A program made the position numbers and the translations under genes. Shown piece by piece: positions 24,711 to 59,215 of a stretch of DNA of 64,000 nucleotides; positions within the stretch are counted from its first letter, which is position 1; the number at the start of each line of letters is the position of its first letter. The stretch is taken from assembly GCF_001194135.2 (NCBI RefSeq), contig NC_069005.1, positions 34,652,110 through 34,716,109 of the forward strand, in the 5' to 3' direction. Source of the stretch: Octopus bimaculoides. Its lineage: Eukaryota. The notes beneath the pieces were generated by a model, which worked only from the letters and a program-made list of their open reading frames with translations, had not been told where the DNA came from and ran no database searches.

Positions 24711-24884
24711 TCAAGAAACCGTGATGACTACTTTGTTGGGCCGTTTCAGCTGGCTTTCTCGTACTAATGCTGTTAACATGCTGTTTTCATTCATTAATAA
24801 TTGAGAAGCTTTATCAAATTCCACAATTCTACCTTGGTCTAATACCATAACACGGTCATAATCATTTAGATGAGTCAGATGATG
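24711..24884 (-). CDS. SUR (ABCC8/ABCC9): SUR terminal exon HHLTHLNDYDRVMVLDQGRIVEFD...VITVS*
   Basis: 174 nt; ABCC VMVLDxGxIVEFD motif; TGA stop. Confidence 0.94.
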   Translation of the reverse strand, partial: HHLTHLNDYDRVMVLDQGRIVEFDKASQLLMNENSMLTALVRESQLKRPNKVVITVS

Positions 24885-27800
24885 CTGGAAAGTAAAGAAA
24901 ACATTGGATATAATGACAGAATTAAGAATCAAAAGACATCTTACCATAATACACCACACACACACCTTAAACAACATAACCAACACACACACACACACAG
25001 TGTTCCCACAATGCAACACTACACATCACCTTATGCAATATAACCCTATCCACAATGTAGCTGTGGTTTGAAGAAATACTTGTCAAGCTATACACAATGC
25101 CTCCAAATCTAGACACACACACACATACACATGCACAATGTAGGAGGCACTTGCATATGTGCTTAGGAAATCTGAGTTATTTCAATGAATATATGTTTAA
25201 ATGATTGGTTTTAAAATAAATTTATGTTCATTCAATCCTTTAATAGATTCAGGATTTGAAAATAAAGTGCACTCACCAAAGTCACAAGAACGGTGGAATC
25301 CCTGAACACAGTGCGGATGAGGTCCTGAATGGTTTCCTCCATCAAGGCATCATCGTTGGTGTGTTCCTGCTCCACTATAACTATTTTACTGTCTCTCATA
25401 TAAGCTCGAGCAAAACAGAAAAGCTATAAAAAAAAAAACAAGGATTACATATATTTAAGTCACCCGTATAATGAGGAATCAAACACAATGACTGTACAAG
25501 GTTGGTTTTGAACATGCGATCTTGTGGTCAATTATTTAATCTAACACCTTCATGTAATAAACATTGGCTAAAGGAACTGAACAATTAAAACATCTGAAAA
25601 TCTCACCTGTCTCTGTCCAATAGTAAATTCCTTGCCTTCATGGAGGACAACAGTTTCTGTGGAGAGAAATATCACTGGTAAAAATAACCATATAAACGAT
25701 AATTTCAACTGTTTGGGGTAACACAAATTACAAGCTACATCTGACAGTGTTTAGGGTAACACAGTTTAGAGGCTGGAGATAAGTGTTTGAGATAACACAG
25801 ATTATGCTGTAAGCTAGAATAAAGGTTGACCTGGGGCTAAACAACAACAGCAGATGTAAGCTTCCCTGTCTACCTTTGGCTTAATGTCCAAATTAATGAG
25901 ATTCCTCTGAGTAACGAACTGCTGACTGAGACAAGTAACAGGAAACCCTCCAGACTGTGTTACATTCAATCAGCATATTTAAGTGTCAAAGTAGTTTAAA
26001 ATGTCTTCTCAGAGAGCTTAAGCAAGTTAATCAGCTGTTGAAAGTACATGTAAGATCAGTTTGGAGTTTACCTATGAAGGTCAGTTTGACATTATATATA
26101 ACAAAAGGAAGGTGTGTGTGATCAGCATTATTGAAGAGTCAAGCAAAGGCAATCCTAAAAATACAACATCTCTATCAACATACCCAGTTTATGGGGAAGC
26201 TCTTGAACTGTGCTTTTCATTTGAACTGCATTCAAAGCTTCCCAAATCTCTGGATCTTTATATATGCCTTCTGGATCAAGATTGAACCTGAAAAACAAAA
26301 CATTTCTGGCATCAGCATTAACTAACTCTCTTTATGTTTGCTTGGTTTTAGTTTAATACAGGTTCACTTGATATACAAATTCATAGATTTACACAAGTTG
26401 TTCAAACAGATATTTTAATAAAATTTGATAATGCTTGTTGAGTTTGGAATAATCTAGATTTGAAATGATGAATGAGAAACTCACCTGACTGTTCCGTCAA
26501 ACATGATTGGGTCGTGGGGTACAATGGAAAGACGAGATCTCAGAACTTGGGACGGCACAACTGATATGTCCTGATAGTTTATCAAGATCTTTCCTTCATG
26601 TACATGGATCATCTTGAATAAGGATAAGATGAGAGATGATCGCCCACTCCCAGCATGTCCACAGAAGGCCACCTTGAAATATAGAAAAAACAACAAACTG
26701 CTGTGTAACTGGCAGCAACAGAAGGAATACAAACAACCACTGTCACCCTGACTAACCACCTCTAGACTAATCATCATCACAACATTAACATTACTAAATA
26801 TAACCATCAGCATCTTCAGCATCACTCCACCTTTACATAACATACACAAACAAACAAAAGAGCTGCTGTGTGGTCACGTGACCAGCTTGGTAGGGTAATG
26901 TCACATGATCATGTGACTGACCAGATTATCAAATGTTGTTATACATCACTGGTCACAATGCACTTTGCACTTTGTTTTAGCTTTCGAATTATGCCACCCT
27001 GCTTGCTAGGTGAATGGGCCAACATTCCTCGTGATCGGAAGGCTCGTCCATCATGGGGTTATTCATTTACTGTTGTATAGACTAGAGCAATATGAAATGA
27101 AGTGTTCCCAATCCGGGAATCGAACCCACTATCTAGCAATTGTAAGTGCAACACCCTAACCACTGGGTCACACACCCTCACAGATATGGTCATATAATCT
27201 TCTTGAAATGACACATTACCATCAAGACATACATTGTTTCTGAAAAGAAAAGACAGATGGTTGCAGGTGGAATGTTTTTGATCAAAAGTATGTTTGACCA
27301 GGAATATATATATATATATCATATCCCACAATATTACCAAACAAAGCTTTAAGCTATCCACCATCTTTATAGTAAGTCCTTCTCTACCAGTTTTTGCTAG
27401 ATGTATGGAAAGGGATCACTCCCAAAAATATGATCAGTTATTACCACAGTGTAAGTCTGCAATTAACCACCTCTACCATTACCATCACAAACAACAAGAT
27501 TTGTTACCTTTTCCGCATCTTTTATAGTAAAAGTGGCATCCATAACGACGGGGCTCTGTTCAGGATCATAGTTTAAGGCAATGTGTTGAAATTCAATGTC
27601 ACCAACATCTGGCCAAGACTCAGGGACCTCAATGCAATCTGTAATATAAAGACAAAAGCAAAATAACATTTTAGAATGAAGGCAAGAATGAAGAACTGTA
27701 ATTTTAAAAAAATACATAATTACTCTATTTGTTTGGCTAAATATAGTTAAAATAGCATTTCTACTTTACAAACAATAATTTAGGGAGAGAAAATGATCAG

Positions 27801-30800
27801 CACACTTTTGCATTCTGAGTTCAAATCCATCTCATGTTCACTGTAATCATCATTCTTCCGGGGTCAATAAAATAACTGCAGATTGATATAATTCACTGTT
27901 CTCTTTTCCGAATTGTTTGTCTATGAATGAGTTAGAAATTACTATTTTTCACTGTCTACGTCCATCTTGTCTTTATTGTCAGGCATTAAATTGAACATTA
28001 AATATGTACAGACAGTTTGGAATTACTGAAATGAGATCTGACCGTTATGTTGAAGCACTGATCAGGTTCCAGAGCTACTTAGAAACTCTGACATTAATTC
28101 AAGCAGAGACTTGCCAAACATTTCAAGACATTACCAGCAGCAATGTATAGAGCTGTAGGATGGCAATCAATGGTACAAGACTTCAATAAATTTTCAAACA
28201 GACAGTAAAAATGATGACACACCTGGTGGATCTACTGAAGGTGGTGTCTCACAAGCATATTCCACAACCCTCTCTAAAGACGAGATGTTGTTCTCTAGTT
28301 CTGTTGCATGACGTGCTATCATGTTCACATAAATTGGCATCTGAAATAGATAAAAATTCTACAGTGCAATGAGGGAAAAATACATCAATATTACTTCACA
28401 GATGTACAGTAAAATAATGATAAAACCATCCAAGAAATTTCTCTACTCAAGAAGAGAACCAAAGAAATATGAATTAGCATGTATATATATTATACAGGTC
28501 GTATATAAAGGTTTTACAGAAGAGTATTGGCTCAGCTGCCCTGAAAATTCCAGCATTTATCTCCAGATTAATGTTGGGCATCATAATGACATCAGTCACA
28601 TTGTTTCTGATTTCCAATTTACATTCAGAATAGACAGTGATGTTTTGTATTTTGGTCAGTGAAAAGTTTAAGATTTCTCTAAGAACTAATATTTCATTCC
28701 CTGCATCACTATCCAGTCAGAATGCAAGAGGTTAATATTGGAAATCTGATATTAAATCCCTTTTTAATTATTCAATCAGAAACTGGATGCCAGTGTTGCA
28801 TATGTGAATCAGTTACACAATTCTCCAATGCAGGTATTGTTTATCAGAAATATATAAGAGCTGACCAGTCCAGCTGGAAGGGGAATTTCAGAGACGACTT
28901 GTAGGGGTCAGCAAAACTAACAAAGGAAATGTGAGCCTGTGATTCTACCAAAACATGAAGAAATCCTCAAATTCTACTTACCATGAGAACATTCAACATA
29001 CAGAGTCCAACTAATGTGCCATTTTCTTCGTTTTGGATGGAGAAAGCCAAGCTACCAAGTGATGCCAGTAATAAAATAAGGCATCCAAGGAAATCCTGCA
29101 ATAAGAAGTTCTTGTTAGAACAAGTTAACCATTTAAGTGGACAGAAACATTATTCTGGGAAGCTTATAACCATTGTTATTACAACTGCTGAATGTGATCG
29201 ACTGGCAGAATTGTTAGCACCATGGCAAAGATACATTGAGACAGTTGTTCAGACACTTTACATTCTTAGATTTAATAAAGTAAAAGATCAGTTAAGGCTG
29301 GGGTCAACTTGATTCACTTATGCCCCCAACCCACAAAAATTGCTGGCCTAATGTTGAAATTAGAAAGAGTAACACTTACCAAACGTATGGCTAACCACCG
29401 ATTCACAGCATGAATGTACAGGAAGACAACATTGAATACGTTTATTGCATGGGTGACATAACCAGTAAACCAGTACTGTACCCTGAAAATAGAATTTAAA
29501 AACAGGCAACTACAAGTCATGTGTTCTATCAGTTGTTTGACACTGAGATACTAAAAATTAGGGACTCAACTAATTTTTAGTTTTAATTACCGTTGCATAA
29601 TCATTTACACCACTCTCCCTAATTTGACTTCAGTAATTTTTAGGTTTTTGAGAGGAGAGCTAACTTACCTTGTTATTCCACTTCAAGAAAAATACAGGTT
29701 ATGATCATGTATTTTGATATATGAATGGTAAAGGACTGGCGAAATAACTAATTAATTAAATAAAAAATTAGTAATAAGCTGATAAATTAAATTAGTTGTG
29801 ACAAAAATGAATAATGGAAAACATTCAATATACCTGTAAGCTCTAATTGTCCGAAGTCCACTAAGAATTTCTGAGAAATGGTTAAAAAGAGGCAGTTTGG
29901 TAAGATTCTGAAGACGATTGAGCTGTCTATAAAATAGAAGAGAAATAATTTGCTGTAGAGAGTAGATTAATGAAAACTAGAATACTTTACCAACTCCACA
30001 CACGTTGGTTTGTGTGTGTCAGTTACACTCTACTTTGCTGACAAAGTATATTCTACTCTACCTGTGTAAACTGTGGGTATGGGAGTATGATATCACATAT
30101 ATACAATAATCTATACCCTTCTCATTTTCCCCATTTGTCTCTGCTGACGGAATAACCCAGAAACAGCTGTAAGACTGAATTTTTTTCCAATAATAATAAT
30201 GTATATGACTCGAGATGTTTGCCTTGTCTTAACGTTTGTTTTCCTATAGATACTGAGAGGTAATATTTATCTTTACTTAAACAAGGATGTCCTGTTACAA
30301 TAAACTATAGAGCAATAAATACTACAAGAGAAACTCTCATATTGACTTTTGGTGCAAAAGGAACTCTTGTTTCTATCCCTAGTGATGTAAACAACATTCA
30401 TCATCATCATCATCATCATCGTTTAACGTCCGCCTTCCATCTTTCTCTATTATTCTTAATTGTACATCGAACACTTTAGCCGTACTCCATCCACTTTCAC
30501 TATTTCACATTTCCTCTACTCTTCATGTTTCCTCTTCGCTTTATATTTACAAAAAACTTGTTTGCAAAATAGTCACTCCTATTTTTTTACTATAAAGTCT
30601 GTCAAGTACATTAATTATTCAGCAAATACAGAGAGCAAAACTTATGGAAAGCCACTTTTAATTTAATGTAGTCCGTTCCTATACATACACACAAACACAC
30701 ACACACACACACAAGCATCTACCATGCATAAACAAGCCTTGTTTGACAGGAAAGCATTAAGAAAACAGGAAAAGACTAACCTGATGGAAGGTCGGTAAAA

Positions 30801-33800
30801 TTTGAAGAGCAGATAAAAGAGTATTATTATAGGAACAGTGGCCAGTACAAAATAGGGCATGGCTATAGAACAGATGACCAACACTATGATTGCTTGTAGT
30901 AAGAACCTCAACAATAACTCTATGGTTGTTGGTAGGATCTGAAATAAACAGGATAGAAGTGGATATAAAATGGTATGTAAAAGTACAAAATTATGGTGGT
31001 GCTCTAGCATGACCACAGCTACATGGCTGAAATGATTAAAAGCATATGTGTGTGTGTGAGTATACAATCAGTGTACTGAAAAGATGCTCTTGATCAAGCA
31101 CAAACAGGACATCTACTCCTTCAGTCCAGGGCAAAACTCTGAGTAGACTCAATTTTGATATAATGAACACGCAGACATACACAAAGAGAGACATATCAAT
31201 GCAGTATTCTATGGCCAGATTCCCTTCCTGATGCCAGTTGTTACTTATATCCCAATAAATAAGTTACTTATTCCACTGGAATCTGAATGGATGGATGAAT
31301 ACAAAAATCTCTCAAGTGCTTTGCGGTCAATGCCTATAGAGAGAAGCAAATGTTCATTTTCTTCATTTTGCATCCATTTTGCTGTAGTGGACAGGTTGGA
31401 GAGGTAATGTCATTTTTGACCACAGTATTTTATTATAACCAGATGATCTTCATTGCTTACCATTTTTTGTTTTACAGATAAGAAAGTTTTCATTCCATTA
31501 TTTCAAGAGCACAGTTATTGCATGAAATATTCACCAGAAACGTAAGTACATAAACAACATATTTTTTTACCCACGCAATCTCAAGCAGAAATGACAACTT
31601 TCTGCTGTACGCGTGCATACATACAGATGTAAACATAATCACAAACACATATTACCCAGTGCCTCTGCATATCTTGTGAGAAAATGGATCTATAACTAGA
31701 ATGACCCTTTCCAAGGTGCAGACGTAGATAAGGTTCGGAACACCAACCGCTTCCCATGGCACCAATGCTGAGGGAGAGAGAGAAGTGAGTGGAGGCATGC
31801 TCAGCTGACCAACACCACAGACACTCAAAACATTGAACTTACCTGGTCAACAATACGACTGTCGGCTGAGAATGTATTGAGAATAGTGGCAGGTGGTGTT
31901 GACTCAAAGTGACTGAAACAGAAAATAAAACAGTCAAGCACTCACTTATTGAATGTTGTAGTTAACAGGTAACATCAATCAGTTCTGGTCAAGATACACT
32001 TAGCACATGCTACAAGCCTTAGTTTATACTTTTAAGACATGGATTTCCCCCTGGCCTACTTAATATCCAAACATACATACAGTAGGCATATAGGCCCATA
32101 ACATATACTTGTCAAACCTTCACTCACCAACACACCACAATCACACGGATACACTATATCCTCTCGCTGCCTTTTATACTGCAACTACAACAGCTCCTGC
32201 TCACAGGAACTAAAAAGCTATCTATCAAAACTGTTTCACTTACATCACAGGTAAACTGGTCAAATAGTGAAGCATCTTCTGATGAAGTCGGTCAGCTCCT
32301 CTCACTGTAGTGAACTTTAGTAATAGACCAGTCAACACTGTGACTGCCACACAGCTTAAACAGATGACCATATATAAACCAATATAGTAGGTGTGGTTGA
32401 CAGGTGTGAGCTGCAGACAGAGAAGAAAACAAAGGATCAACATTGTTACATTTTATGTGTGATTAGACTGTAGAAGATTGTCACCAGAAATCAAATTTAT
32501 ATTTAGTGTGAAAGGGATAGACCCAAGAAGTGGGATGAAGTGGTGTGAAAGGCTCTTGAGACACTGGGCCTCACTGAGGAAATGACATGGGACCAGGAGT
32601 TGAGGTGATTTGCTGAACTTGAGAAGATGTGTCCAGTTAAGAAGAATCATGGTCATCCATACATACAGGCATGTCTTTTGCAAGTGCCAGTGCCACATGA
32701 TGTACACATGATTGAAAGGTGAAAAGAGAAAAACAAAAAAACCACCTACCTTTGGACTGGTGATGGAATTATTCTGATGTATTTCATAATGCACAGAGTG
32801 TTTTGAGTACATCCAGTTAGCAAGCCAAAGATCAGAGGTGACGATTAAAGTGTGTTTGCACAAAAGGAGTATCACCAATAATAGAACCAGTGAAGAGGAG
32901 CAGAGTTTCAGGAATTCAAAACACATGCCAGTGGAGATTGAACCAAGGTCACGCAGATCCAGTTTTAATGATGGACTTTCTTCTTCTTCATTGTCCTCTA
33001 TCAGATAACAAACAGACATCATCATCATCATATACACACACACACACATTACATAAATAGCTTTTTTTTTAGTAATACTTACTTTTACTTTTCCATTACA
33101 TGCAAACCATGTGTGTATGTATACACATACATACATACATACATGCATAAACAAACAGACTATCTACACACATGTGTACACAAATTATGAGTTAACCTTC
33201 AATATTATATCAATATCAAAATTAATTCCAGAAAATACTTTTCCAAAATATTTAGAGAGAAAGAAAGAAACATTAAAGATTACAGAGAAATCTTAGAGAT
33301 ATTCTGTAAAAGAATTGCAGATTGAGAGAAATGAATCCACACAGATTCTCCTTTGTAACACAGCAGCAATGGTGGATTTATTATCACCTTCGCCTTAGCG
33401 AAGGCAGATGTATTGTTTGCAGTCGCATTTGTTTGTTTGTCTGTGGACAAAATATCTCAAGAACCACTGGATGGAATCGGATGAAATTTTCAGGGATGTT
33501 TGGCCTTGGGATTGGCATGAACTGATTAGATCTTGGGATCAATCCGGTACCGGACAAGGATTCTGGATTATTTTACCACTTTTTTTACTTAATTTTTGAG
33601 AGCAGCTGCATTCATTTTTAGTATTCCCGTTTGTGAGAGCAGTGAAGTTTATTTCAGATATTCTTATTTTAAAAATCATCTCCGGCTAATTGTTGAGAGG
33701 ACATTGGTGTTGCCTTGGCGGGGATTTGCGCTCTCTAAGTGCTCTTGTTAATTTTGATTTGTAATTAATAAGTTGTCAGAACAGATCCATTACATTCTTT

Positions 33801-36800
33801 AAAATGAAATCATTTAGGATTCATCTTCTTAAGTTGCTACTTTGGTCAGGTGCATGTCTCAGGTAAACAATTGATAAAGAACAGGTGGAAGAGTAGAACT
33901 AAGGAGAAACGGGTTTCCTGACTCTGTAACCGCAACTACAACCACATGCTGGGCAAAATGCTTAGCAGCATTCCATCCGTCTTTACATTCCAAGTTCAAA
34001 TTCTGGCAAAGCCAACTTTGCCTTTCGTCCTTTCAGGGTCAATAAAGTAAGTACCAGCTGAGTACTGGAGGGGGGGGGGGTCAATGTAATCAACTTACCC
34101 ACTTCTCTGAAATTACTGTGTGTGTGTGTGTGTGTGTGTGTAAAATCTACAGCTCTGAATCAACTGTCAACCTTCTCCTTATATTCAGACCAGCTCAATC
34201 TTCACTCTTGCACATTGCATCTGATTCCTCTGAGACAAGTTCTTTTTTTTTTTCCCTTCGGTTCAGTTGTATTATTTAAACACTGGGAAAAAGACATCTC
34301 TTCCGACCAGAAATGTAATGTTTCTTTCCAGACAGACAAGTTTGTCAACTCTACTAGTGTCCATAAGAGAGGGACAACTAAAGAGCGTTAATATTCTGAA
34401 AGAGAATAAATAGCACGTGTGTGTGTGTGTGATATGCATTAATGTGGCAGAAAAGAAGAAGGTGCATTAGTTTTGCATAAGTGTTTAAGCAGAGATTTAA
34501 CATGTGGTATACAATACAGGACGGTGCATCACTTGCAACTCTTCTACAGTGTACTACATGAAAAATACTACATATTTATATTGACTACCAGTAATAGTAG
34601 TGATAGTAGCAGTGGTAACAATAGCGAGGAGGGGAGGGTAGGAGGAGCCAGTGCAGAATACTTTACGTTCATAACATGTCTCCTTTGTGTAGTCATCAAG
34701 GGGAAGTAAATCATCTGAAAAAAGGTGACAGTTTAGAAGTGATACAGTCCAACCGTTCGGTAGTAAATACGGGCATTAACTTACCTCATAACAAGATTCC
34801 ATTTACAGAATTAACTGTTTCTGCTAAACAATTCTGGTTCTGGTCACCCCTCTCCCCTCTTTAAAAATGCTCACTATATACATAATATATACACACAACA
34901 TTATTTATATACATAATATATACACACAATATTATTTATATATATATATAAACTAGCAGTCCATCAGTTAGGACAATGAGTGTTCCAGTGGATCCAATCA
35001 ACAGAGCAGCCTGCTAATGAAATTAACATGCAAATGGCTGAGTGCTCCACAGACACACATACCCTCAATTCTCTCAAAAATATAAATGAACTTTAAATAA
35101 CTGCCATGACACTGACAACAATGCTGTAATTGTTACACAATAAATACTTTAAAAACGAAACTCTAGCTTTCTCGTCACTGTAGCAAAGAAGGAACTGCTG
35201 ACAGGTGGACGGTCAGCTTTCTCGTTCTGACTAAGTCCTTGGAAATTGGTTTATTGTATAAAAGAGTCGACAAAGACATGGGTGCATGCATAAAGGCATT
35301 CATTATGCTTGCACAAAACACATGCAAACACAGGGAAACATTCACAGATGATGATTGTGTTCATGCAAATATAGAAACCAGAAATAAACATGCATGTGGA
35401 CCCATACACACAGACACAGAACACAGGTATATACAAATCTACATACAGCCATACAAACAAACATACAAGCATACAGCTGAAATTGCTAAAAAAAATATTT
35501 AGCGTTTCTACATCAGACTTAAAACATTAAACTGTTTTCTGCAGAAAATACATGAAAATCAAATAAAATCATATTCTAAAAATATATAGTCTCCATGAAG
35601 TGTGCGTGTGGTGTATGGCAGTACCATATTTCTTCAAATAGGTAACAGTAAAGAGTAAAAACTCCCACCTCCTTTAGTCATGAATGACCATGGAATGGCA
35701 CCTAGAAAGTTCCCCTCCAAGGCACAAGTCCAAGCAAGGTTGTTTCTGGAAGACCAGCAGTAGCCCATGCATACCAACCCACCCTCTCCACACCACCAAT
35801 GTTATCCAAGGGAATGACAAAGAGCGATACAGCTTGGCACCAGTGATATCGCATCGCATTTTTACAGCTGAGTGAACTGGAGCAAAGTGAAATAAAGTGT
35901 CTTGCTCAAGAGTACAATATACAACCCGGTCTAGGAATTGAACTCACTACCTCATGATTGTGAGCCTGACACTCTAACCACTGAGCCATGTGTCTTCAAA
36001 TACAGGTAGAATATATCACAAGTTTTTTTACCCAGGTGGGCGATGGAGCATTTTTTGGCCAATAGGTAGGCAATATTGCAATTTGGCACAAAAGGTTTAA
36101 GAAACACTGCTTTAGGGTCTGGAACTGTAAAATAATTCAGATCACATCTAGCACACACACACACACACATTATATATTCAAGATGTTGTTAGTGTAGGGT
36201 GTTCCAGACAACATTAGTGACTCCGTCTACAGATGTGTCACACCAACTCAGCGATGAAACATCTATGTGGCCACTCAACTACCTGGAAGCAGGAGCCAAA
36301 TCTCCCTCAGATCACAGTCAACTATCTTGAAACACATTAGATGTTGTAGTGCCAAGATACATTGTGGCTGAATAAAAGACAAAACGGTCACAGTTAGATC
36401 ACATTTTTGTATCATTTGTTGGATTAAGGGGTGGGATTAGTGGGGGATAAACAGCACTCACATTATACTACATCCTACCATCATAACACCACAACCAGAT
36501 ATACACACACATATAATTGTGACTTTAATGTTAGACAAGATACTTACCTTCTTCCAATCCATCATCCTCAAGACTATTTTCTGTCATTACAGACATCTGT
36601 GATACCTGACGACTAATTGGTATCCCAAGGTTTGACTGAAACACAAATATATATACCAGTAATATACAGGGGTTTAAACACACAACACACAGGAAATTCA
36701 TTTGCAAGTTCAGTGAACCTACGACTAAAGATGACCTTAAATGTGTCCTTTTTTTAATATTATAAAATGTTAAGGAAGACTTAGCTACTATTTCTTGCAG

Positions 36801-39233
36801 ATTGAGCAACTATATAGAGACTCCACATTAACTCATGCCTTTAAAAGTAAATGTGAATCCACTCAGAGAAGGCTCAGCACACTTCTCACCTGTAGCCACT
36901 GCTGTCCCTTTTCATAGCTTTCTTCATGTCAATATATATGAACACACACACAAAATGATTGGAGACAACATACCTGTATAGACAGCTTGTGTACTGGTTC
37001 AGAGATATGGTCAAAACTAGTTCGCCGGTGCTTGTCAAACTCATGGTCAATATCCTGCCTGGAAGTTAACAAAAATACCACACCAATAAAATATAAACTA
37101 CACCTTGCATATATAAATAAATAATAAATGCGTTCTACTCTCTGTTTCGATGTTGGCCATACTGTCTTCCAAATGTATTACATTGTCCCCTAAGGTATCT
37201 CTTTGTAGATCTAAACCCATTCAGCATGTCAGAAATCAACTCTTCAGCATTTAAACTGACCCAAATATTCTTCCTGTTTTATGGTCAAACTGGCCAGATC
37301 CAGTCTCTCTCACCTACCCTACAATGCTAGTTCTAAAAAATATTCAATCACACAATTGAAATCTCAAAGTTACAAGATAATGCTGGATAAATTCAAAAAC
37401 ATGTGGATAAATAAATGTTACATTTGATAGAATAATCTGAATGCTATATGGTTTTAAAAGGGCAGCATCTTATTTGGAAACTGTTTTAAACTTAGATCTT
37501 TAGAATACAAGGTGACCACACTAAGCAATGATGTGGATAAATACAAACTTGCTACAAGATTAAAATATGCTTGAGGCACATTCAAATCCATAATAAAGAT
37601 GACTCACTGTGTTTTGTCACGGAGAAAATTTCTTGTCAACAGCAAGAAAATATAGTGAATGGCATTCTTACAGGTTTATTAAATATACTCCAAACAATTT
37701 AAACTGATAACGAGTTTAGATCTTTGATACTTCAGAGAGATTACATAGGAAATGAGTTGAAGTGTACATGTGTGTGTGCGCACGAGTTTAAATTTTAGAT
37801 CAACATAGAGGATAGTCACCCGAAACAATCATTGTTTGCCCTGGAACAGTTTCAAAGTTTCAGCCTAGGGTTCACACAAATGTTCTACAATAACAGTCTC
37901 AATGTACAACAATGATTGAGGGACAGACTCACACTGTACTTACGACACTGTATAGGCCATAGTAATACTGTACGTTCAAAGGACACAACATGCAATTAAA
38001 GATCACACAAGTTTGGTATGAAAATATTTTGAAGAAGATGGGGTGAAGGTAGAATAATAGAAAATAACTGTGATAAGGAATAAGAAGAAGAAAAAAAGAA
38101 AGAAATAGAGTAAAGTATTGTGATTACAAAAATAACAACAACAACAGCTGAAATATTGACTAGATGGTCATGTGACTACTTAATTCATTAGGCATATAGA
38201 ACAAAATGGTTTGGCGAGAAAGCATTATAGAATTGTTTATGAGGGGGAAATAAGAGGGTCATCTCGTTGGCTTTGCCATCCATTGCACACCCATACAACC
38301 TTTAAATTTTAAGGTCTTGCACATTTTTATTGTCCCCCAATACTGTGATTATCTCAGGTTTATGAATTATCAACAATCGAACTTCAGCCATTCATTCATC
38401 CAAATGTTTTGGTTATAATCCCTATCACATTAATAAATGGATAGAAAGTAGGACTTTGGGTGGGGTGGGGGACTAAGGGATTTGCACACTCTTCATGTAT
38501 GGCTCATGTCATCTCTTTGTTGTAGTTTTCTTACTGTGTTGATGCCGTGTGTGTGGATTTGAGTTAGCAGTTATTTTGTAATTAGCTATAAATATTTCCA
38601 GTTGTTGCTGTTGTGTTTGTTGTTAGTAAAAAAACACAACATTGAAGAAACAGAGAAGAAAAGTAACAACAGCACGTACAATACAATAATAAAAAAAAAA
38701 AATAAAACAATAATAATAATCCTTTCTGAAATTTGGTGGGGAGTAGGTAAATCAGGTACATTGATCCCAGTACTCAACTGGTACTTATTTTATTGACACC
38801 CAAAAGGATGAAAGGCAAAGTCGACCTAGGCAGAATTTGAACTCAGAACATTAAAGTCAGACGAAATACCGTTAAGTATTTTGCCCAGCATGCTAACAAC
38901 TCTACCGGCTCACTGCCTTAACAATAATAAGAATAATAATAATAATAAAAAAAATAATAGTGGTAAGAACCTGGTCAGAAAGAACACAAAAGTACATATA
39001 TACATATATATATATACATATATACATACATATATATATATATATATAAGAATAAGAAAGCATTCACAGAAGTAATACCTCTCAGCCAAACTGGATCTCC
39101 TGAAATCAAAGAATCAACAGATTAAATATTCCCCAACAGAACTTGACCAACATTCTTCAGAATAAAGTTGCACAACAGAATAAATAAGGATATATGTATG
39201 TTTGTATGTATATATGTAAGATAGATAGATATG

Positions 39234-39299
<66 letters not shown>

Positions 39300-42266
39300 T
39301 GAAAATAGTTTCATTCACTGAAAGTTCTGGCCTTCCCTGTTGTTATTGAGTCTCTTGTTACTGTTTTGTTATTTAAAACAACTTCAAGAACCTCAGAGAA
39401 ACAAGAAATCTTGAGTAGCAACAGGATGGAGTTCAAGATCCAAATGAATTGCTTAAACTTTATGCTTACTAAATACTTTTCTCTCTTCTTTGTACACCCA
39501 TACATATAACAAAGTGTGTGTGTGTATCTTATATGTCACTGGTCTCTTCATGTGTAAAGAAGATGTCCATTTATAGCTCTTCAGCCTTTTAAAATGGTTC
39601 TTCTCAATTTTGTAAAGTAGGGACAGCGAGCACCCACTCACTCCCATCTTCTGCCTCTCACTGGGATATGAGAATGAATACACAGCTACTCACATTGAAA
39701 GGTACACATACATACTCCCTACCAAACCAACTACAATAACTCTTTCCTAGGCATTACAACCAAAAAAAAAAGAGAAAAAGAAAAAAGAAAAAAACAATGG
39801 AACAAGTTCCCCTGAGAAACAAAGACAAACTTTTCAGAATTCAATGCCACAATTAGTATCTGTTATGACTGTACATAGATTTACCAAAACAATTATAGAT
39901 GCAGCTAAAAATATATTCATTAAGGCAATACAAGACATACAACTCTGATTACAAGACTGAAACCGTCAAACTGATAATGAACGGAGACAACCCCAGACAC
40001 TAAAACCAGAAATGTAGATATATATATATATATATATATAAATTTAAATACTAAGGGTGAAAAATTGAGTATTAATTTAATTAATATCAATTTAAAACCA
40101 GTGGCCTAGCATATTGAAAAATCTGAAGATTCAGAAAAATTATATTACATACATATACGAGGGATGACCACTAAGTGGACATCCATTATGCTAGAAGACC
40201 ACCTATGGTCTGACCATTAAGAAGAGATTGTTCTCAAGAAAAAGTATAGTTCCAAAGTTACCAATCACATGCAGCAGGTAACACTCTTGTTTTGCTGTGT
40301 TATGAAAGAGACATCAATAGATTAATCAAAGTGTGATTACATTAGTTTCTAAAATATCTGTGAAAACTGAAACTTCAATGAATCAACAAAAGAAGGAAAT
40401 GACACAATATTTGTATTGACTAATGAGTGATGGATGAATATGACAAAAGAGTGAATATTGAAGATAACAGATGCTTTGGGTGAGGTGTAAAAGTGATATA
40501 TGAGAGTGGACACCTCAACAAAGAGTTACAACCCCAGGCCATTTCAGTTTTTCAGTTTATATCATACTAAACATAAGTAGACAAAAAGCATGCCCTACTG
40601 CCCCTCAGGTCACCCAATACATGCACTGCACAGTCCAGAGTATTGAGCAGCATTTATAACAAAAAATGCAAGACAGAAGTAAAACCCAGTGACTTAGATA
40701 TACTCAGGTTGTGTGAGAGAGAGAGAGAGAGATCGGTTCATGAGAGAAAGAAAGAAATGTGAATACCTGGTTGGTATGTGAGAGAGAAAGAATGAGTGAA
40801 ACAGGACATACTAATGACCAAAATTCCAGAAAAGATAATAGAAACAGGAAACAGAAAAATACCTTTCTGGAAGACTTGATCTCCTCCTGGGGCAACAAAA
40901 TAAAAACAATAGCTTCATTACTGATATTTAACATGTTGTAACATGCTATTTAAGGTGATTAGAATAAATCATAGCTACATGTGATATGTTGTAATAGACT
41001 CTTAAGTTTTTCATTATTTATTCTTGTACAAGTACTTAGACCAGATCCTCAGTTTCAACAACCGACACAACAACCACATTAGTGTAGGAAGACCTTCAAA
41101 GTCATAGCTGAGAATGACAGATCATAACATACATTGAGAGGTCATAGCAAGCGAAGCGATAAGATGTATTGACAAGGCACGGAAGACCACGACAGGTTAC
41201 AACAGATCACAGGCAGTCATTGCAAACTAAAGAGATGTTGAGAGGTCATGGCACACAATGAGAAGTGACAGCAGGTCATCAGAGGTGATGACAGGCCATA
41301 GCAGACCACTGCAGGTCATAAAAGATGAAACTGACCCGGAAATAGTTAGAAGGTACTCCTCATTTGATTCCTATGCTGCAAAACCATAGACGTAGAGAGA
41401 GAGAGTATTTCACAACATGACATATAAGAGTACCTCAGTACCCAATATACAGAGAGTACCTAAAAAAGAAAAAAAGGATCAAGTGTCGTTCCTGAGCCAT
41501 AAGCTCAAGGCCAGTTTCCCAGAATCTGTGGTGTATACACCCACCCTAGATGGGACACCAGCCCACTTTAGGATTGCTCACTTTTGCCAAATGAGGGGAC
41601 TGGAACAACATGAAATGAAATGTTTTTGCTTGCCCAGTCCAGAAATTGAAACCACAATCTTATAATCATGAGTGTAACACCCTAACCACTAAGCCATGCA
41701 CCACCACAGAGAGTACCCAAGTACATGACATAGAAAGAACCTCAGTAGACAATAAATAGAGGATTCCACAACAACAAAGATGGTACCTCACTACAAAACA
41801 GGCAGAACCTTACAAAAGGATACAGAGTTCTTCATTACACAACACAAAGTAAAATTGACAACAAGATATAGGGTACGTCACTACAAGACATACAAGCAGC
41901 ACTACATGGTACAGAGTACCTCAAGACAGACAGTATAGTACCTCACTGCAAGATATAGAGTACCATGCCAAAAAAAAAACCTGATGATAGTTCATTATAA
42001 GGCATGCAGTACCACATAATAAAACATACAAAGTACCTTATTATGAAATTTAGAGTACTGCAAGGAAGACATGACTTTATTACAAGACATATGGAACCAT
42101 GCTATCAGACAGTCATGCAGTACTGCACAAGACAGAGACAAACTACTCTTGCTACTACTAATAACACTACTGATCAATACTTACTGATACTTTTGAAAAA
42201 ATATCAATATGTATTGAGTACTTCACTACAAGATCTTGTTCTGAAATATATAAAACCAAGCTGTAT

Positions 42267-42297
<31 letters not shown>

Positions 42298-42985
42298 TAT
42301 TTTGCAACATCCAGCTCACATACATACACATGCACACACAATACTCTACAGATACTGACAATATTTTACTACATCACATACATACACACACTCACAGTAT
42401 ACAGCTACAGGACAAGGACATGACCACATGACATCAATATATAAAAATCTATCAAAAAATACCTTTCAACCACATTAGTTCTTCTGGAAATAAAATTGAT
42501 ATAATAATGGAAGTTAGAAGATAAAGTAAAACTGATTAATTATTATAATTTATGTGTTCTTGACAATGATGATGATGATGTCGATAATTATTTAGGATTT
42601 AGGCCATCAATTACAAGGAGAGGGATGGTCAATTCCATCAATGAAGGGATTAAGCAATTATATCAACCCCATTTCTTCACTAGGACTTTATTTTATTGGC
42701 TCCCAAAAGAATGAAAGACAAAATCAACCTCAGTGGAATTTGAACTTACATTGTACAGAACCAGAACGAATATCACACAGTAGTTTCTTTTTTCTCACAG
42801 TCTAACAATGCTGCCACTCCACTACTATCACTACCGACATTGACCCCAGTATGCGACTGGTACCTTATTTTATTGTCTGCAGAAGGATGGACGACAAGGC
42901 AGACTTTGGCAGGATTCAAGCTCAGAACACAAAATGTCGGATTAAATGCCACTAAGCCTGTTGTACTAACAACAATTCTACCACC

Positions 42986-43022
<37 letters not shown>

Positions 43023-44335
43023 TCTACTAAAGGCACAAGGTGTAACTGGTACTTATTTCATCGACCCCCAAAAGGATAAAAAGCAAAGTCAACCTCAGTG
43101 GAATCTGAACTCAGAACATAAAGATGGACTAACCACATGGTTCCGGCATGGTACCTAGGCCAAGTGTCTTCTACTATAGTCTTGGGCTGACCAAAACCAT
43201 ATGAGTGGATTTGATAGACAGAAACTGAAAGAAGCCCATTTATATATATATATATGTATGTATGTATTTGTGTATCTGTGCTTGTTCTCCCACCATTGCT
43301 TGACAGCCAATGTGTTACATTCCCGTAACTTAGCGGTTCAGCAAAATAAACCGATAGAATAAATACTAGGCTTACAAAGAATAAGTCCTGGGGTTGATTT
43401 GTTCGACTAGAGGCGGTGCTCCAGCATGGCCGCAGTCAAATGACTGAAACAAGTAAAAGAATATATACATTATTCAGACAACATAAATACCAGAAAATAT
43501 TTGACTCCAATACAGATTTCTGGCAGCCATCTCGACGAGTTCAAATATAGACAGAAGGCCATGAAGTTGGGGAGAGGGCTAGCATTTACTTTATATACCC
43601 TGAACAAATATTAAAGATGTGCATCGCATAATTAATATAATGGCTGTAAATGGGATTAGTGAATGTCAAAGTAGAAGACACACCAAACAGAGTAAGGGAG
43701 ACTACTCGATATTGATGAAGGGAGGTAACTTGGTCTAAACAGACGTAAGTGGTCTATGTGTGACAGGGGCGGCTAATGTTGGCTAACTATACGGGGAACG
43801 AAGGAGGGTTAACACTATGTGAGGCTTCTCGGGAGACTTGTAATAATATGTGGGAGAGGGATAACATATTGTGGGTTAACACTTCATTCAAACATTATAT
43901 GGTTTGACCAACTCCTCCATTTATGTGAAGTTAATAAAACACTTAATGATTTCATGGGTTAACCCCACATCAATTATCTGGGTTAACATGACATTCAATT
44001 ATTTTAGCTTCTACAACAATAAAATAGGTTAATATCAAACACGTAATGGTTGTTACAATACAAAAAAATCAAGTGGGATAACATAAAATGTAGGCATGAC
44101 GAGAATAATCTAACCCAGATGTGGAGTGTAAAGGGGCTAACACTTACTTGTTATCCTTCAGTACCCTTCTCCAGCTTTCATAGAGATCAGGGTCAGCACG
44201 CTTTATGTCCTTCAATCTTCCCTGACATTTGATTTGGTGACGATTCACAACAATTATCTGCAGAGAAACAAAACATGTATTACTATTGTGTGGGGGGAGG
44301 GGGGTTTAGAAATTACTATCGTGTGTAAATATATG

Positions 44336-44372
<37 letters not shown>

Positions 44373-47300: not shown

Positions 47301-48769
47301 GTCAAGGATGTCCAGCACAGATGCCCCGCTGTTCTGCCGGCTGTGGTTTGGAGTGTGACCCAGGGGGGGACTACTCTCCACTGATGAGATACTTCCACGC
47401 ATCGCTCCATTGTGGAACGCCATGCTAAGCTGGTTGGTTTTTACATCATACTTCATCAGAGTGTCCAGCTTGTTCTAACAACAACAACAACATCAGTAAG
47501 AGTGACATCACAACACACACACACACACACACACACACCACAAAGAAGAAAGTGAAGGAGACGAAATAGGAGATCTCGAAACGTTTATAAAGAGTAGCAG
47601 CAAGAGGAAATGTAAAAGTTGAGGGTGTACAAAGAGTAGCAGTAAGAGGAGATATTATAATTGAAGGTGTACAGGAGGATTAGTTGAGGGTGTAAAAAGA
47701 GTAACAGTTGAGGGTGTAGAAAGAGTAGCAGTAAGAGGAAACATGACAACTGAAGGTGTACAGAAAGTAGAAATAACAGAATATGTAAGAGTTGAAGGTG
47801 TACAAAAAGTAGCAGTAAGAGGAGATGTAACAGTTAAAGGTGTAGAGAGAGTAGCAGTAAGAGGAGATGTAACAGCTGAAGGTGTACAAAAAGTAGCAGT
47901 AAGAGATATGTTATAATTGAAGGTGTAGAGAGAGCAGCAGTAAGAGATCTGTCTGGAAGAGTGGCAGTGATGTTTTTCCAAACTTACTAACATGGGTGGA
48001 ATTGATTTTGAAAATTCAGACATTTCTGCATCACTGGATCTTGAGTCCATCACCAGCAGAGTAGGAGTGGAACCTGTTGTCAGCCATGTGGACTAATTTG
48101 GTTTACAGAGGAGAAAATATCTGTAGCCCCCCTACACTACCAACTCCTGCAGAATAATGTGCCGTGCAGCCCACCTACATTGTAGGACCATAGTGTACCA
48201 TGTGGTCCACATACAATAGGACATAGTGTACCATATGGTCTACAAAGAGGTGCTAAAACGCTCCTGGCTTTAAGGGCATCGTGAAAGGCCTGGTTAAAAG
48301 CCCAATCTTCCGACTTCTTTTACAGGGCTTAGAAAGACTAAAGGACTGCTGTAATAAGTATGAGAATCTGAGAGGGGAATACGCTGAATAAAATTATAAT
48401 TAACTGATCCTCCTGCATTTTCTTTTACCCAATAGGTACAGTAGGATGTACTGTATGACGTGGTTGAACTATCATAGAACAGACTGTACCATGTGGACCA
48501 CCAGCACACCACAGTCCACCACGTGGTCCATTTTACTAGAGGACATTGGGTACAATATCCTCCTTATAAACAGAAGATTGAGTAAACAGAAAACTAAATA
48601 TATTTCACAGCAGCAGTCAGGGAACCATGAGTGTGTAAAGCACAGGCAGCAGGATTATAATAGCATGAAACTATTGGTAGCTCTTTCGGTGGTGTATTTA
48701 AATTCATATTTATCTCTCACTGGAGGGAGTACTTTTTTTCTTGACCTTACCTCTATCGGATCTGTAAAC

Positions 48770-48823
<54 letters not shown>

Positions 48824-53712: not shown

Positions 53713-53743
<31 letters not shown>

Positions 53744-56700: not shown

Positions 56701-57283
56701 AGAAGCTTACGTAGGGTTGGATGTATTTGAGATAAGCCAGTTCTTCAGGTGAGTGTACAGGGCATGGTTCTTGGAAAAAAGCATATTTCTGGAATGAAAA
56801 GAGAGAAGAACATTATCATGAGATCATTATGAATGACAAAGCCTTCTTGCATTAAATAACTCGATCCCTAAATACAAAAAAAAACTCTTTAAATAAAAAA
56901 AAAAGGCAATATTTACAGAAGAGCTTGATTCGCAAATGGTTGGGTAATTTAATTTGTTAATATTCAGGCTGACCTAAACAGAGCAGAATGGCAGAAATGG
57001 TATTTGGCTAAGTCTCTTTATATTCTGGAGTCCGTCTCCCAATGTTATCAACAACACCGTTTTTATGTATGTTTTGTTTCCCATTACTGGCTTGTGTTGG
57101 CCAAAGTCTTATCAAGGGACAACTCTATGACCAGAGACTCTTTCTGTTGTTGATAACCATTAACTGGCTTTCGTTCACTGAAAGTGTAGAGTTACACAAT
57201 GTCATCATGGCTGCAAACACAATGTCACTGCTTTGTTCATACTGTGTCATGCAAACAGATATAGGAGGTAAATATTCACACAG

Positions 57284-57314
<31 letters not shown>

Positions 57315-59179: not shown

Positions 59180-59215
<36 letters not shown>

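What the first reader, a model, noticed from the sequence alone, without database searches (positions are those of the whole stretch)
25277..26672. NBD2 catalytic motifs are all substituted: a naturally hydrolysis-dead SUR
In ABCC proteins NBD2 normally supplies the active site (SUR consensus GRTGSGKSS, LQDP, IMDEATASID). Here Walker A is GHAGSGRSS (Lys->Arg, codon CGA at 26640-26642). The Q-loop is IVPHDP (Gln->His). Walker B is IVIVEQ (Mg-binding Asp->Glu, catalytic Glu->Gln, codons 25367-25372). The D-loop is EHTNDD and the signature FTIGQ. E->Q and K->R are standard laboratory mutations that block hydrolysis or MgADP stimulation in ABC proteins, including SUR1. The full reading frame and TM motifs are intact, so this does not look like a pseudogene. 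Inference: a pseudo-ATPase SUR acting as scaffold or regulator. A-to-I editing cannot restore Lys (CGA), Asp (GAG) or Glu (CAG).
Basis: partly seen in the sequence, partly recalled or inferred. Interest (0 to 1): 0.82.

Follow-up and report, generated by a model that had tools for sequence, protein, structure and literature searches.

The report
Octopus SUR with a dead ATPase site
Octopuses, squid and cuttlefish carry an intact, strongly conserved sulfonylurea-receptor gene whose only ATP-splitting site was disabled in their common ancestor, a natural test of whether this ion-channel regulator needs to hydrolyse ATP.

Summary
The window is Octopus bimaculoides. The gene lies on the minus strand (ATG 60614, TGA 24711). 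It has 33 constitutive exons and 5 cassette exons, all introns are GT-AG, and it reproduces RefSeq ABCC9 isoforms X1-X3 exactly. Its TMD0 matches only SUR1/SUR2 among solved structures, so it is the SUR orthologue.

In NBD2, Walker A is GHAGSGRSS (Lys to Arg), the Q-loop is PHDP, and Walker B is IVIVEQ (Asp to Glu, Glu to Gln). The partner half of the same ATP site, the NBD1 signature, is LTEGQ rather than LSGGQ. All six coleoid sequences share these states, two of them as full-length cDNA contigs. All 26 non-cephalopod SURs that I aligned are canonical.

The gene is not decaying:
- NBD2 is the most conserved domain, with dN/dS of 0.011-0.016 between two decapodiforms.
- The substituted residues persist through synonymous codon turnover (Arg is CGA, AGA or AGG).
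- The ABC core was remodelled on the coleoid stem, while TMD0-L0 was spared.

The most likely reading is a functional, non-hydrolytic regulatory SUR. Three points are untested: ATPase loss, nucleotide binding and the partner channel. FTIGQ is normal for the family, and the H-loop His is retained. I found no publication describing this.

The parts
24711..60614 (-). Whole SUR (ABCC9-like) gene of Octopus bimaculoides. It has 33 constitutive exons from ATG 60614 to TGA 24713-24711, giving 1745 aa. With 5 cassette exons it gives 1808 aa.
   Evidence: The spliced model has GT-AG at every intron and no stops. With cassette exons added it equals XP_014770068/71/72 exactly.
59964..60614 (-). Exon 1, encoding the N-terminus and most of TMD0 (the SUR-specific domain).
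   Evidence: phmmer against the PDB hits only SUR1/SUR2, at E about 1e-39. No other ABCC matched even at E up to 1.
46281..46386 (-). NBD1 Walker A exon, GPSGSGKST. Lys875 is retained (AAA at 46348-46346).
47094..47096 (-). NBD1 A-loop position. It is Thr843 where other SURs have Trp.
45151..45231 (-). NBD1 signature exon. LTEGQ (45222-45208) replaces LSGGQ. Glu963 (GAG at 45216-45214) sits at the second Gly, the position of CFTR G551. This is the NBD1 half of composite site 2.
44591..44728 (-). NBD1 Walker B/D-loop/H-loop exon. It reads (TIIM)DD, which is family-typical. The D-loop is SKIE instead of SALD. The H-loop His is replaced by Pro1020 (44623-44621).
27508..27638 (-). First NBD2 exon. 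The A-loop Tyr1505 is retained (TAT at 27570-27568).
26485..26672 (-). NBD2 Walker A and Q-loop exon. Walker A is GHAGSGRSS (26660-26634), with Arg1536 as CGA at 26642-26640. The Q-loop His1578 is CAC at 26516-26514.
26184..26287 (-). NBD2 exon encoding FNLDPEG...PHKL, the helical subdomain. RFNLDPE is shared with SUR.
25607..25656 (-). NBD2 signature exon, FTIGQ (25627-25613). This is the family-typical degenerate signature that belongs to site 1.
25277..25423 (-). NBD2 Walker B and D-loop exon. Walker B is IVIVEQ (25384-25367), with Glu1657 as GAG at 25372-25370 and Gln1658 as CAG at 25369-25367. The D-loop region is EHTNDD (25366-25349).
24711..24884 (-). Last exon. The H-loop reads (VT)LHHL, with His1689 retained (24884-24882). 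It also holds the C-terminus and the stop codon.
31843..32410 (-). TMD2 exons 21-22, holding the remodelled intracellular motif LPVIHFESTPPATILNTFSADS. Other SURs read PMRFFDTTPxGRIxNRFSxD. I take this to be an NBD-contacting loop.
49077..49151 (-). Cassette exon SSFSISRLRSVVQSAKSMFSCIDCK, lying before NBD1.
39079..42483 (-). Three tandem micro-exons in the NBD1-TMD2 linker: 42483-42463 (RTNVVE), 40886-40863 (RRRSSLPE) and 39099-39079 (RRSSLAE). They are used alternatively.
   Evidence: isoforms
34667..34714 (-). Cassette exon DDLLPLDDYTKETCYE(Q), lying before TMD2.

Best explanation
This is the single detectable SUR (ABCC8/9) orthologue of coleoid cephalopods. On the stem lineage of octopuses, squid and cuttlefish, the only catalytic ATP site of the protein was inactivated from both sides. 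That site is composite site 2, made of the NBD2 Walker A, Walker B and Q-loop plus the NBD1 signature.

- NBD2 changes: Walker A Lys to Arg, Walker B Asp to Glu, catalytic Glu to Gln, Q-loop Gln to His.
- NBD1 change: signature LSGGQ to LTEGQ.

Site 1 is already non-hydrolytic in all ABCC proteins. It additionally lost its A-loop Trp and H-loop His. The protein therefore most likely cannot hydrolyse ATP at either site (inferred).

It is nevertheless a working protein (shown). It is transcribed and alternatively spliced, and the altered NBD2 is its most strongly constrained domain.

The most likely mechanism (inferred) is that it acts as a purely regulatory, non-enzymatic ABC subunit. The normally evolving TMD0-L0 module still couples it to a partner channel. 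The remodelled ABC core no longer runs a MgATP-hydrolysis/MgADP cycle. Instead it switches by some other means, or is held in one conformation. Candidates are nucleotide binding without hydrolysis (A-loop Tyr, P-loop backbone and H-loop His are kept), new protein-protein contacts across site 2, or phosphorylation of the alternatively spliced RRSS linker cassettes.
For: - Motifs and codons were read directly from the sequence.
- The gene is intact and matches RefSeq isoforms exactly.
- SUR identity: NBD2 scores best against SUR2 (216 bits), then SUR1 (200), ABCC5 (193), ABCC4 (190) and MRP1 (169). TMD0 hits only SUR1/2.
- All 6 coleoid sequences share every substituted state, and 26 other SURs do not.
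- cDNA contigs from two decapodiform RNA-seq runs carry the same motifs.
- dN/dS between two decapodiforms is 0.011-0.016 for NBD2. It is 0.04-0.05 for TMD0-L0, NBD1 and TMD2, and 0.07-0.11 for TMD1.
- Octopod versus decapodiform identity is 86.8% in NBD2, the highest of any domain.
- The substituted residues are kept through synonymous turnover: Arg is CGA/AGA/AGG, Glu is GAG/GAA/GAA, Gln is CAG/CAG/CAA.
- The ABC core was accelerated on the coleoid stem. NBD2 identity is 43-44% between cephalopods and gastropods or bivalves, against 58.8% between gastropods and bivalves. TMD0-L0 shows no such gap (about 49-50% in all comparisons).
- Conserved positions replaced in all coleoids: NBD2 28/84, TMD2 16/48, NBD1 18/71, TMD1 7/29, TMD0-L0 1/19.
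[quoted passage not shown] Every substitution tested at the human SUR1 catalytic Glu (E1506) reduces MgADP activation and causes disease (PMC3114383).
Against: - No ATPase, nucleotide-binding or channel assay exists for any cephalopod SUR.
- Lys to Arg and Asp to Glu are conservative. The A-loop Tyr and H-loop His are kept, so slow or unconventional hydrolysis is not excluded.
- The partner protein is unknown, and I could not search the octopus proteome for a Kir6-like channel.
- The absence of a canonical paralogue rests on database searches, not on a full genome scan.
- Nautilus and the other mollusc classes were not sampled, so the timing is only 'after the split from gastropods and bivalves, before the octopod-decapodiform split'.
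Confidence: 0.7

Rival explanations
1. NBD2 no longer binds nucleotide at all. Site 2 has become a fixed protein-protein interface, for example a salt bridge between the new Walker A Arg1536 and the new signature Glu963. The NBDs would then be constitutively associated and the protein would be a nucleotide-independent scaffold.
For: - Both halves of site 2 changed together and are invariant in all coleoids.
- A Glu at the second signature Gly, the position of CFTR G551D, should repel the gamma-phosphate (established knowledge).
- The two D-loops and an intracellular TMD2 motif, PMRFFDTTP, were also remodelled.
Against: - The A-loop Tyr1505, the glycine and serine scaffold of the P-loop, and the H-loop His are conserved. 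That is most easily explained by continued nucleotide contact.
- No structure or model of the dimer could be computed here, because the full-length protein exceeds the size limit for structure prediction.
Confidence: 0.15
2. Site 2 still hydrolyses ATP through a non-canonical catalytic arrangement. For example, Glu1657 at the Walker B Asp position, or His1578 or His1689, could act as the general base. The protein would then remain a slow ATPase or MgADP sensor.
For: - Very strong purifying selection acts on exactly these residues.
- An acidic residue is still present in Walker B, and the H-loop His is retained.
Against: - Lys to Arg and Glu to Gln each abolish or nearly abolish hydrolysis in the ABC proteins studied, and here they occur together (established knowledge; PMC7756269, PMC4699857).
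- They co-occur with loss of the Q-loop Gln and disruption of the signature.
Confidence: 0.1
3. This is a neofunctionalised duplicate. A canonical SUR paralogue elsewhere in coleoid genomes carries out the ancestral Mg-nucleotide-sensing role.
For: - The ABC core is accelerated, as is often seen after duplication.
- The searches used are not full genome scans.
Against: - An exhaustive HMMER search of 1.84 billion representatives and a word-indexed search returned only one cephalopod SUR lineage.
- Among the 88 retrieved proteins with a SUR-type TMD0, every full-length cephalopod entry has the degenerate motifs. No intermediate or canonical cephalopod entry appears.
- TMD0-L0 evolves at the ordinary rate, as expected for the orthologue.
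Confidence: 0.04
4. This is a pseudogene, relaxed selection, or an assembly or sequencing artefact.
For: The assembly is a draft with N-runs in the window.
Against: - There are no stops or frameshifts across 33 exons, and all splice sites are canonical.
- No N-run falls in an exon.
- The same residues appear in independent genomes and cDNA assemblies, with different codons.
- dN/dS is about 0.01-0.02.
Confidence: 0.01

Closest known systems
Vertebrate sulfonylurea receptors SUR1/SUR2 (ABCC8/ABCC9), the regulatory subunits of KATP channels
   Same: - The architecture is the same: TMD0-L0-TMD1-NBD1-TMD2-NBD2.
- TMD0 is homologous only to SUR among solved structures.
- NBD2 is closest to SUR2 and SUR1.
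- Site 1 is degenerate in the family-typical way, with a Walker B Asp-Asp in NBD1 and an FSxGQ-type signature in NBD2.
- RefSeq names the gene ABCC9.
   Different: - The consensus site 2, which hydrolyses MgATP and binds MgADP in SUR, is substituted at the Walker A Lys, the Walker B Asp and Glu, the Q-loop Gln and the NBD1 signature.
- NBD1 lacks the A-loop Trp and the H-loop His.
- 24-33% of the deeply conserved ABC-core positions are replaced.
- The partner channel and the pharmacology are unknown.
SUR orthologues of other molluscs (gastropods, bivalves) and of Lingula, echinoderms, a hemichordate and amphioxus
   Same: They belong to the same orthogroup. TMD0-L0 is about 50% identical between cephalopods, gastropods and bivalves in all pairings. 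They share linker motifs such as SQMSVMTE.
   Different: All of them keep GRTGSGK[ST]S, IIPQDP, DEAT[AS]S[IV]D, AHR and LSGGQ. Only coleoids carry the substituted set.
Laboratory and disease mutants of site 2 in ABCC proteins: SUR1 Walker A Lys and Walker B Asp mutants, SUR1 E1506 variants, and CFTR K1250, E1371Q and G551D
   Same: The same residues are hit. The site-2 Walker A Lys, the catalytic Glu (changed to Gln) and the second Gly of the NBD1 signature (changed to an acidic residue) match classic loss-of-hydrolysis or loss-of-gating mutations (PMC4699857, PMC3114383; the CFTR part is from my own knowledge).
   Different: Here the changes are natural and combined. They have been fixed in a whole clade for its entire crown-group history, and they come with many co-adapted changes in both NBDs and in TMD2.
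Asymmetric ABC exporters with one degenerate and one consensus site (MRP1, CFTR, TM287/288, TmrAB)
   Same: They follow the same principle: a nucleotide site can lose catalysis and take on a structural or regulatory role (PMC7756269).
   Different: Those proteins keep one active ATPase site that drives the cycle. In this protein neither site has a consensus catalytic set.
CFTR R domain (a phosphorylation-controlled linker between NBD1 and TMD2)
   Same: The linker at the same position carries dibasic-Ser motifs (RRSSL), here on alternatively spliced micro-exons.
   Different: There is no sequence homology to the R domain. Phosphorylation was not shown, and the resemblance is one of position and motif only.

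Membership tests
SUR / ABCC8-ABCC9 orthogroup (membership by descent) | Long ABCC architecture: TMD0-L0, TMD1, NBD1, TMD2, NBD2 | tested here: met
   The 1745-aa model is collinear with SUR over its whole length. Pfam finds ABC_membrane and ABC_tran twice each in the orthologues.
SUR / ABCC8-ABCC9 orthogroup (membership by descent) | SUR-type TMD0, distinct from the TMD0 of the MRPs | tested here: met
   The exon 1 peptide hits only SUR1/SUR2 chains in the PDB, at E 3e-39 to 6e-38. No MRP1, MRP2 or Ycf1 chain matched even at E up to 1.
SUR / ABCC8-ABCC9 orthogroup (membership by descent) | NBD2 and the whole protein are closest to SUR rather than to other ABCC members | tested here: met
   SUR2 scores 216 bits and SUR1 200, against ABCC5 193, ABCC4 190 and MRP1 169. 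The nearest named relatives are all annotated ABCC8/9-like.
SUR / ABCC8-ABCC9 orthogroup (membership by descent) | Family-typical degenerate site 1: NBD1 Walker B Asp in place of the catalytic Glu, and an FSxGQ-type NBD2 signature | tested here: met
   The window has IIMDD and FTIGQ; decapodiforms have FSVGQ.
Functional KATP-type SUR (Mg-nucleotide-activated, ATP-hydrolysing regulator) | Consensus site 2: NBD2 Walker A Lys, Walker B Asp-Glu, Q-loop Gln, and NBD1 LSGGQ | tested here: not met
   The residues are Arg1536, Glu1657-Gln1658 and His1578, and the NBD1 signature is LTEGQ. This holds in all six coleoids.
Functional KATP-type SUR (Mg-nucleotide-activated, ATP-hydrolysing regulator) | Assembly with Kir6-type pore subunits, MgADP activation, and sulfonylurea or opener binding | not testable with these tools
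   This needs co-expression electrophysiology and binding assays.
Asymmetric ABC exporters (one degenerate plus one catalytic site) | One consensus, hydrolysis-competent nucleotide-binding site | tested here: not met
   Neither composite site has a full consensus set.
Pseudogene | Disrupted reading frame or splice sites, and neutral evolution (dN/dS near 1) | tested here: not met
   The ORF is open and all 32 introns are GT-AG. dN/dS is 0.011-0.016 in NBD2 and 0.05-0.07 over the whole protein.

The most novel reading that the evidence does not exclude
In coleoid cephalopods the SUR engine has been rebuilt so that ATP no longer glues the NBDs together at site 2. The co-fixed pair of Walker A Arg1536 (NBD2) and signature Glu963 (NBD1) would form a direct salt bridge that takes the place of the gamma-phosphate. 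Control of the regulator would shift from the ATP/ADP ratio to phosphorylation of the alternatively spliced RRSS micro-exon cassettes in the NBD1-TMD2 linker. That would make it a CFTR-like, kinase-gated SUR without any ATPase. The Lys to Arg change (AAR to AGR, then CGA in octopus) could even be a hard-wired former A-to-I editing site.
Probability: 0.1. Interest if true: 0.85.

Novelty: new variant of a known kind. Interest (0 to 1): 0.62.

Why it matters
SUR proteins couple cell metabolism to membrane excitability. They do so through Mg-nucleotide binding and hydrolysis at NBD2. Whether hydrolysis itself is needed has been debated since the 1990s (PMC4699857). In humans, mutations at the same catalytic Glu cause hyperinsulinism or neonatal diabetes (PMC3114383).

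Coleoids have kept a SUR with the combined loss-of-hydrolysis genotype (Lys to Arg, Glu to Gln, and an acidic residue in the partner signature), under the strongest constraint of any domain. That makes them a natural experiment.
- It shows that a SUR scaffold can be useful without a catalytic site.
- It provides a ready-made set of co-adapted substitutions for structural and electrophysiological comparison with canonical molluscan SURs.
- It raises the question of how cephalopod excitable cells sense energy state.

To my knowledge it would also be the first ABCC protein in which neither nucleotide site is catalytic.

Tried and rejected
- A word-indexed protein search with the NBD2 peptide alone returned only short, unrelated ABC fragments at 46% identity or less. 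Longer queries were needed.
I used the cuttlefish fragment P0072 instead.
- To find exons without a reference, I concatenated minus-strand ORFs and searched the PDB. This located the TMD2 exons but was costly. I dropped it once the Argonauta orthologue P0192 allowed tblastn.
- Octopus versus decapodiform dS is saturated: NG86 is undefined and ML gives 3-8. I took dN/dS from the two decapodiform cDNAs instead.
- Pseudogene and artefact readings were rejected (see the rival explanations).
- I considered whether echinoderm-like 'ABCC9-like' clusters with weaker TMD0 similarity might hide a cephalopod paralogue. They are all deuterostome.
- Rfam found nothing in the window.
- The 24 kb downstream of the gene holds only simple repeats, N-runs and no recognisable ORF.
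- Four literature searches for cephalopod or invertebrate SUR degeneracy, or for ABC proteins with both sites inactive, found nothing relevant. A fifth, for ABC-transporter surveys in octopus, also found nothing.
- I did not run structure prediction. The full protein exceeds the 1200-aa limit, and the tool returns no coordinates to measure the Arg-Glu distance.
Full report
**What is at the coordinates.** The window is eukaryotic DNA of about 37% GC with introns and eight N-runs. On the minus strand, 26672-24711 holds five exons that encode an ABC nucleotide-binding domain from its Walker A motif to the stop codon. The motifs are as follows.
- Walker A is GHAGSGRSS at 26660-26634. The Arg is CGA at 26642-26640.
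- The Q-loop is IVPHDP. The His is CAC at 26516-26514.
- The signature is FTIGQ at 25627-25613.
- Walker B is IVIVEQ at 25384-25367. The Glu is GAG at 25372-25370 and the Gln is CAG at 25369-25367.
- The D-loop region is EHTNDD.

One correction applies. The last exon begins at 24884, so the H-loop reads TLHHL and its histidine is retained.

**The gene.** I located exons in three steps. First I searched concatenated minus-strand ORFs against the PDB. Then I ran tblastn with a full-length orthologue. Finally I ran an explicit search for splice junctions.

The result is a 33-exon gene from ATG 60614 to TGA 24711. All 32 introns are GT-AG, and the open frame is 1745 aa. No N-run falls in an exon. 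Adding five cassette exons reproduces Octopus bimaculoides RefSeq 'ATP-binding cassette sub-family C member 9' isoforms X1, X2 and X3 residue for residue. The cassette exons lie at 49151-49077, 42483-42463, 40886-40863, 39099-39079 and 34714-34667. The window is therefore O. bimaculoides, and the locus is an annotated, alternatively spliced gene.

**Is it a SUR?** NBD2 scores best against SUR2 (216 bits) and SUR1 (200). ABCC5 (193), ABCC4 (190) and MRP1 (169) follow. The decisive evidence comes from TMD0. The exon 1 peptide matches only SUR1 and SUR2 chains in the PDB, at E about 1e-39, and no other ABCC matched even at E up to 1. Its closest named relatives across molluscs, brachiopods, echinoderms, hemichordates, amphioxus and vertebrates are all ABCC8/9-like. 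By descent it is the SUR orthologue.

[quoted passage not shown] The partner of the NBD2 Walker motifs is the NBD1 signature. Here that signature reads LTEGQ (45222-45208) instead of LSGGQ, with a Glu at the second glycine. From my own knowledge, that is the position of CFTR G551D.

NBD1 keeps its Walker A Lys (GPSGSGKST) and its Q-loop Gln. It has the family-typical Walker B Asp-Asp. It has lost the A-loop Trp (Thr843), the SALD D-loop (now SKIE) and the H-loop His (Pro1020). So site 2 is disabled from both sides, and site 1, which is non-catalytic in all ABCC proteins, has drifted further. FTIGQ belongs to site 1 and is normal for the family: other SURs read FS[VIQM]GQ.

**Distribution.** A motif table from a 24-sequence alignment gives the picture.
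- All six coleoid sequences share every substituted state. They are O. bimaculoides, O. sinensis, O. vulgaris, Argonauta hians and two decapodiform lineages. One of the decapodiform lineages clusters with Acanthosepion pharaonis.
- All nine gastropods, all six bivalves, two amphioxus sequences and a vertebrate SUR1 have the canonical NBD2 motifs: GRTGSGK[ST]S (GKTGSGKSS in one amphioxus paralogue), PQDP (LQDP in the vertebrate SUR1), DEAT[AS]S[IV]D and AHR. All but that amphioxus paralogue also have LSGGQ.
- Lingula, four echinoderms, a hemichordate and a skate are likewise canonical.
- Among the 88 retrieved proteins with a SUR-type TMD0, GHAGSGRS and IVIVEQEH occur in all 26 full-length cephalopod entries and in no other entry.
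- No canonical cephalopod paralogue appeared in an exhaustive HMMER scan of 1.84 billion representatives or in the word-indexed search.

The substitutions are therefore a coleoid synapomorphy. They arose after the split from gastropods and bivalves and before the octopod-decapodiform split. Nautilus was not available.

**Is it under selection?**
- Two decapodiform orthologues exist as intron-less RNA-seq contigs. L002 is 6517 nt and L003 is 5514 nt, and each carries the complete ORF. This is cDNA evidence that the gene is expressed with these motifs.
- Between those two contigs dS is 1.1-1.8. dN/dS is lowest in NBD2, at 0.011-0.016. TMD0-L0, NBD1 and TMD2 give about 0.04-0.05, and TMD1 gives 0.07-0.11.
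- Octopus versus decapodiform dS is saturated. Even so, NBD2 is 86.8% identical, the highest of any domain, while third codon positions are only 44% identical.
- The substituted residues are maintained through synonymous turnover. The Walker A Arg is CGA, AGA or AGG. The Walker B Glu is GAG, GAA or GAA. The Gln is CAG, CAG or CAA. The signature Thr is ACA, ACT or ACG, and the signature Glu is GAG, GAG or GAA.

Together these results exclude decay, relaxed selection and assembly error.

**What happened on the coleoid stem.** TMD0-L0 identity is the same (48-50%) for cephalopod-gastropod, cephalopod-bivalve and gastropod-bivalve comparisons. In the ABC core, however, cephalopods are much further from both groups than those groups are from each other.

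| Domain | Cephalopod vs gastropod or bivalve | Gastropod vs bivalve |
|---|---|---|
| NBD2 | 43-44% | 58.8% |
| NBD1 | 48-49% | 62.9% |
| TMD1 | 32-34% | 49.8% |
| TMD2 | 33% | 51.5% |

I then counted positions conserved in at least 92% of 26 non-cephalopod SURs and asked how many are replaced in all six coleoids.

| Domain | Replaced / conserved |
|---|---|
| NBD2 | 28/84 |
| TMD2 | 16/48 |
| NBD1 | 18/71 |
| TMD1 | 7/29 |
| TMD0-L0 | 1/19 |

For NBD2 against TMD0-L0, Fisher's exact test gives p = 0.012. The TMD2 changes cluster in the intracellular PMRFFDTTPxGRIxNRF motif, which here reads PVIHFESTPPATILNTF. So the whole ATP-driven engine was remodelled and then frozen. The module that docks SUR to its channel in vertebrates evolved normally throughout.

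**Mechanism.**
- Shown: the gene is an intact, expressed and strongly constrained SUR orthologue whose consensus site lacks every canonical catalytic residue.
- Inferred from established mutagenesis: it cannot hydrolyse ATP. In SUR1, mutating the site-2 Walker A Lys or Walker B Asp impairs both MgADP and MgATP activation, and mutating catalytic residues impairs ATPase (PMC4699857). Substitutions of the human catalytic Glu E1506 all reduce MgADP activation and cause disease (PMC3114383). In asymmetric ABC exporters the consensus site is the one that powers the cycle (PMC7756269).
- Inferred: the protein works as a non-enzymatic regulatory subunit. The retained A-loop Tyr, P-loop scaffold and H-loop His suggest that nucleotide may still bind. 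The acidic signature residue argues against a normal ATP sandwich. Which of these holds is open, and I give the nucleotide-free scaffold variant about 0.15.

**Comparison with what is known.** It is a SUR by descent. It fails the functional definition of a KATP-type SUR, which requires a consensus site 2. It also fails the definition of the asymmetric ABC class, which requires one active site. The closest analogues are laboratory and disease mutants of SUR1 and CFTR, but here the changes are natural, combined, co-adapted and clade-wide. Literature searches found nothing on cephalopod SUR or on ABCC proteins with both sites inactive. RefSeq names the gene ABCC9 without comment.

**Verdict.** It is a new variant of a known kind and is of moderate to high interest.

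Noticed in passing
window 45208-45222, 47094-47096, 44705-44716, 44621-44623 (minus strand): NBD1 of the same gene is also altered. The signature is LTEGQ instead of LSGGQ. The A-loop Trp is Thr, the D-loop SALD is SKIE, and the H-loop His is Pro. The Walker A Lys and the Q-loop Gln are kept. The signature change completes the inactivation of composite site 2.
   Followed up: yes
window 42483-42463, 40886-40863, 39099-39079 (minus strand): Three tandem, phase-preserving micro-exons of 21, 24 and 21 nt lie in the NBD1-TMD2 linker. They encode RTNVVE, RRRSSLPE and RRSSLAE, and the RefSeq isoforms use them alternatively. The RRSS motifs look like PKA-type sites, at the same position as the CFTR R domain.
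   Followed up: partly
window 49151-49077 and 34714-34667 (minus strand): There are two further cassette exons: SSFSISRLRSVVQSAKSMFSCIDCK before NBD1 and DDLLPLDDYTKETCYE before TMD2. Isoforms without them exist in O. vulgaris and Argonauta.
   Followed up: partly
window 32410-31843 (TMD2 exons 21-22): The deeply conserved intracellular motif PMRFFDTTPxGRIxNRFSxD reads PVIHFESTPPATILNTFSADS in all coleoids, and six of its conserved positions are replaced. This suggests that the NBD-TMD coupling interface was remodelled together with the NBDs.
   Followed up: partly
whole gene, domain comparison: TMD0-L0 evolved at the ordinary molluscan rate, while TMD1, NBD1, TMD2 and NBD2 were all accelerated on the coleoid stem. 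After that, NBD2 became the slowest-evolving domain.
   Followed up: yes
window 26640-26642; L002 and L003 Walker A codons: The Walker A Arg is AGA or AGG in decapodiforms and CGA in octopus. AGR is one A-to-G step from the ancestral Lys codon AAR. That is the same change A-to-I editing would mimic, so a formerly edited site may have become hard-wired. This is pure speculation.
   Followed up: no
proteins P0361, P0362, P0221 (Branchiostoma ABCC9-like paralogue): An amphioxus SUR-like paralogue has an altered NBD1 Walker A (GPHDSGKTS) and signature (WLTPGQKRR) but a canonical NBD2. This would be an independent, partial erosion of the same composite site.
   Followed up: no
protein P0455 / P0193 (Lingula anatina ABCC9 models): The Lingula gene models contain duplicated NBD1 and NBD2 segments. 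This is probably an assembly or annotation artefact, so I did not use them for rate estimates.
   Followed up: no
window 1-24000 and N-runs at 6446-6921, 7710-8381, 11123-11137, 15336-15569, 17137-17574, 22665-22846, 52204-52213, 61656-61818: Downstream of the gene there are only microsatellite-like repeats (CA, TA, GA), assembly gaps and no recognisable ORF or Rfam RNA. The one gap inside the gene (52204-52213) is intronic.
   Followed up: partly
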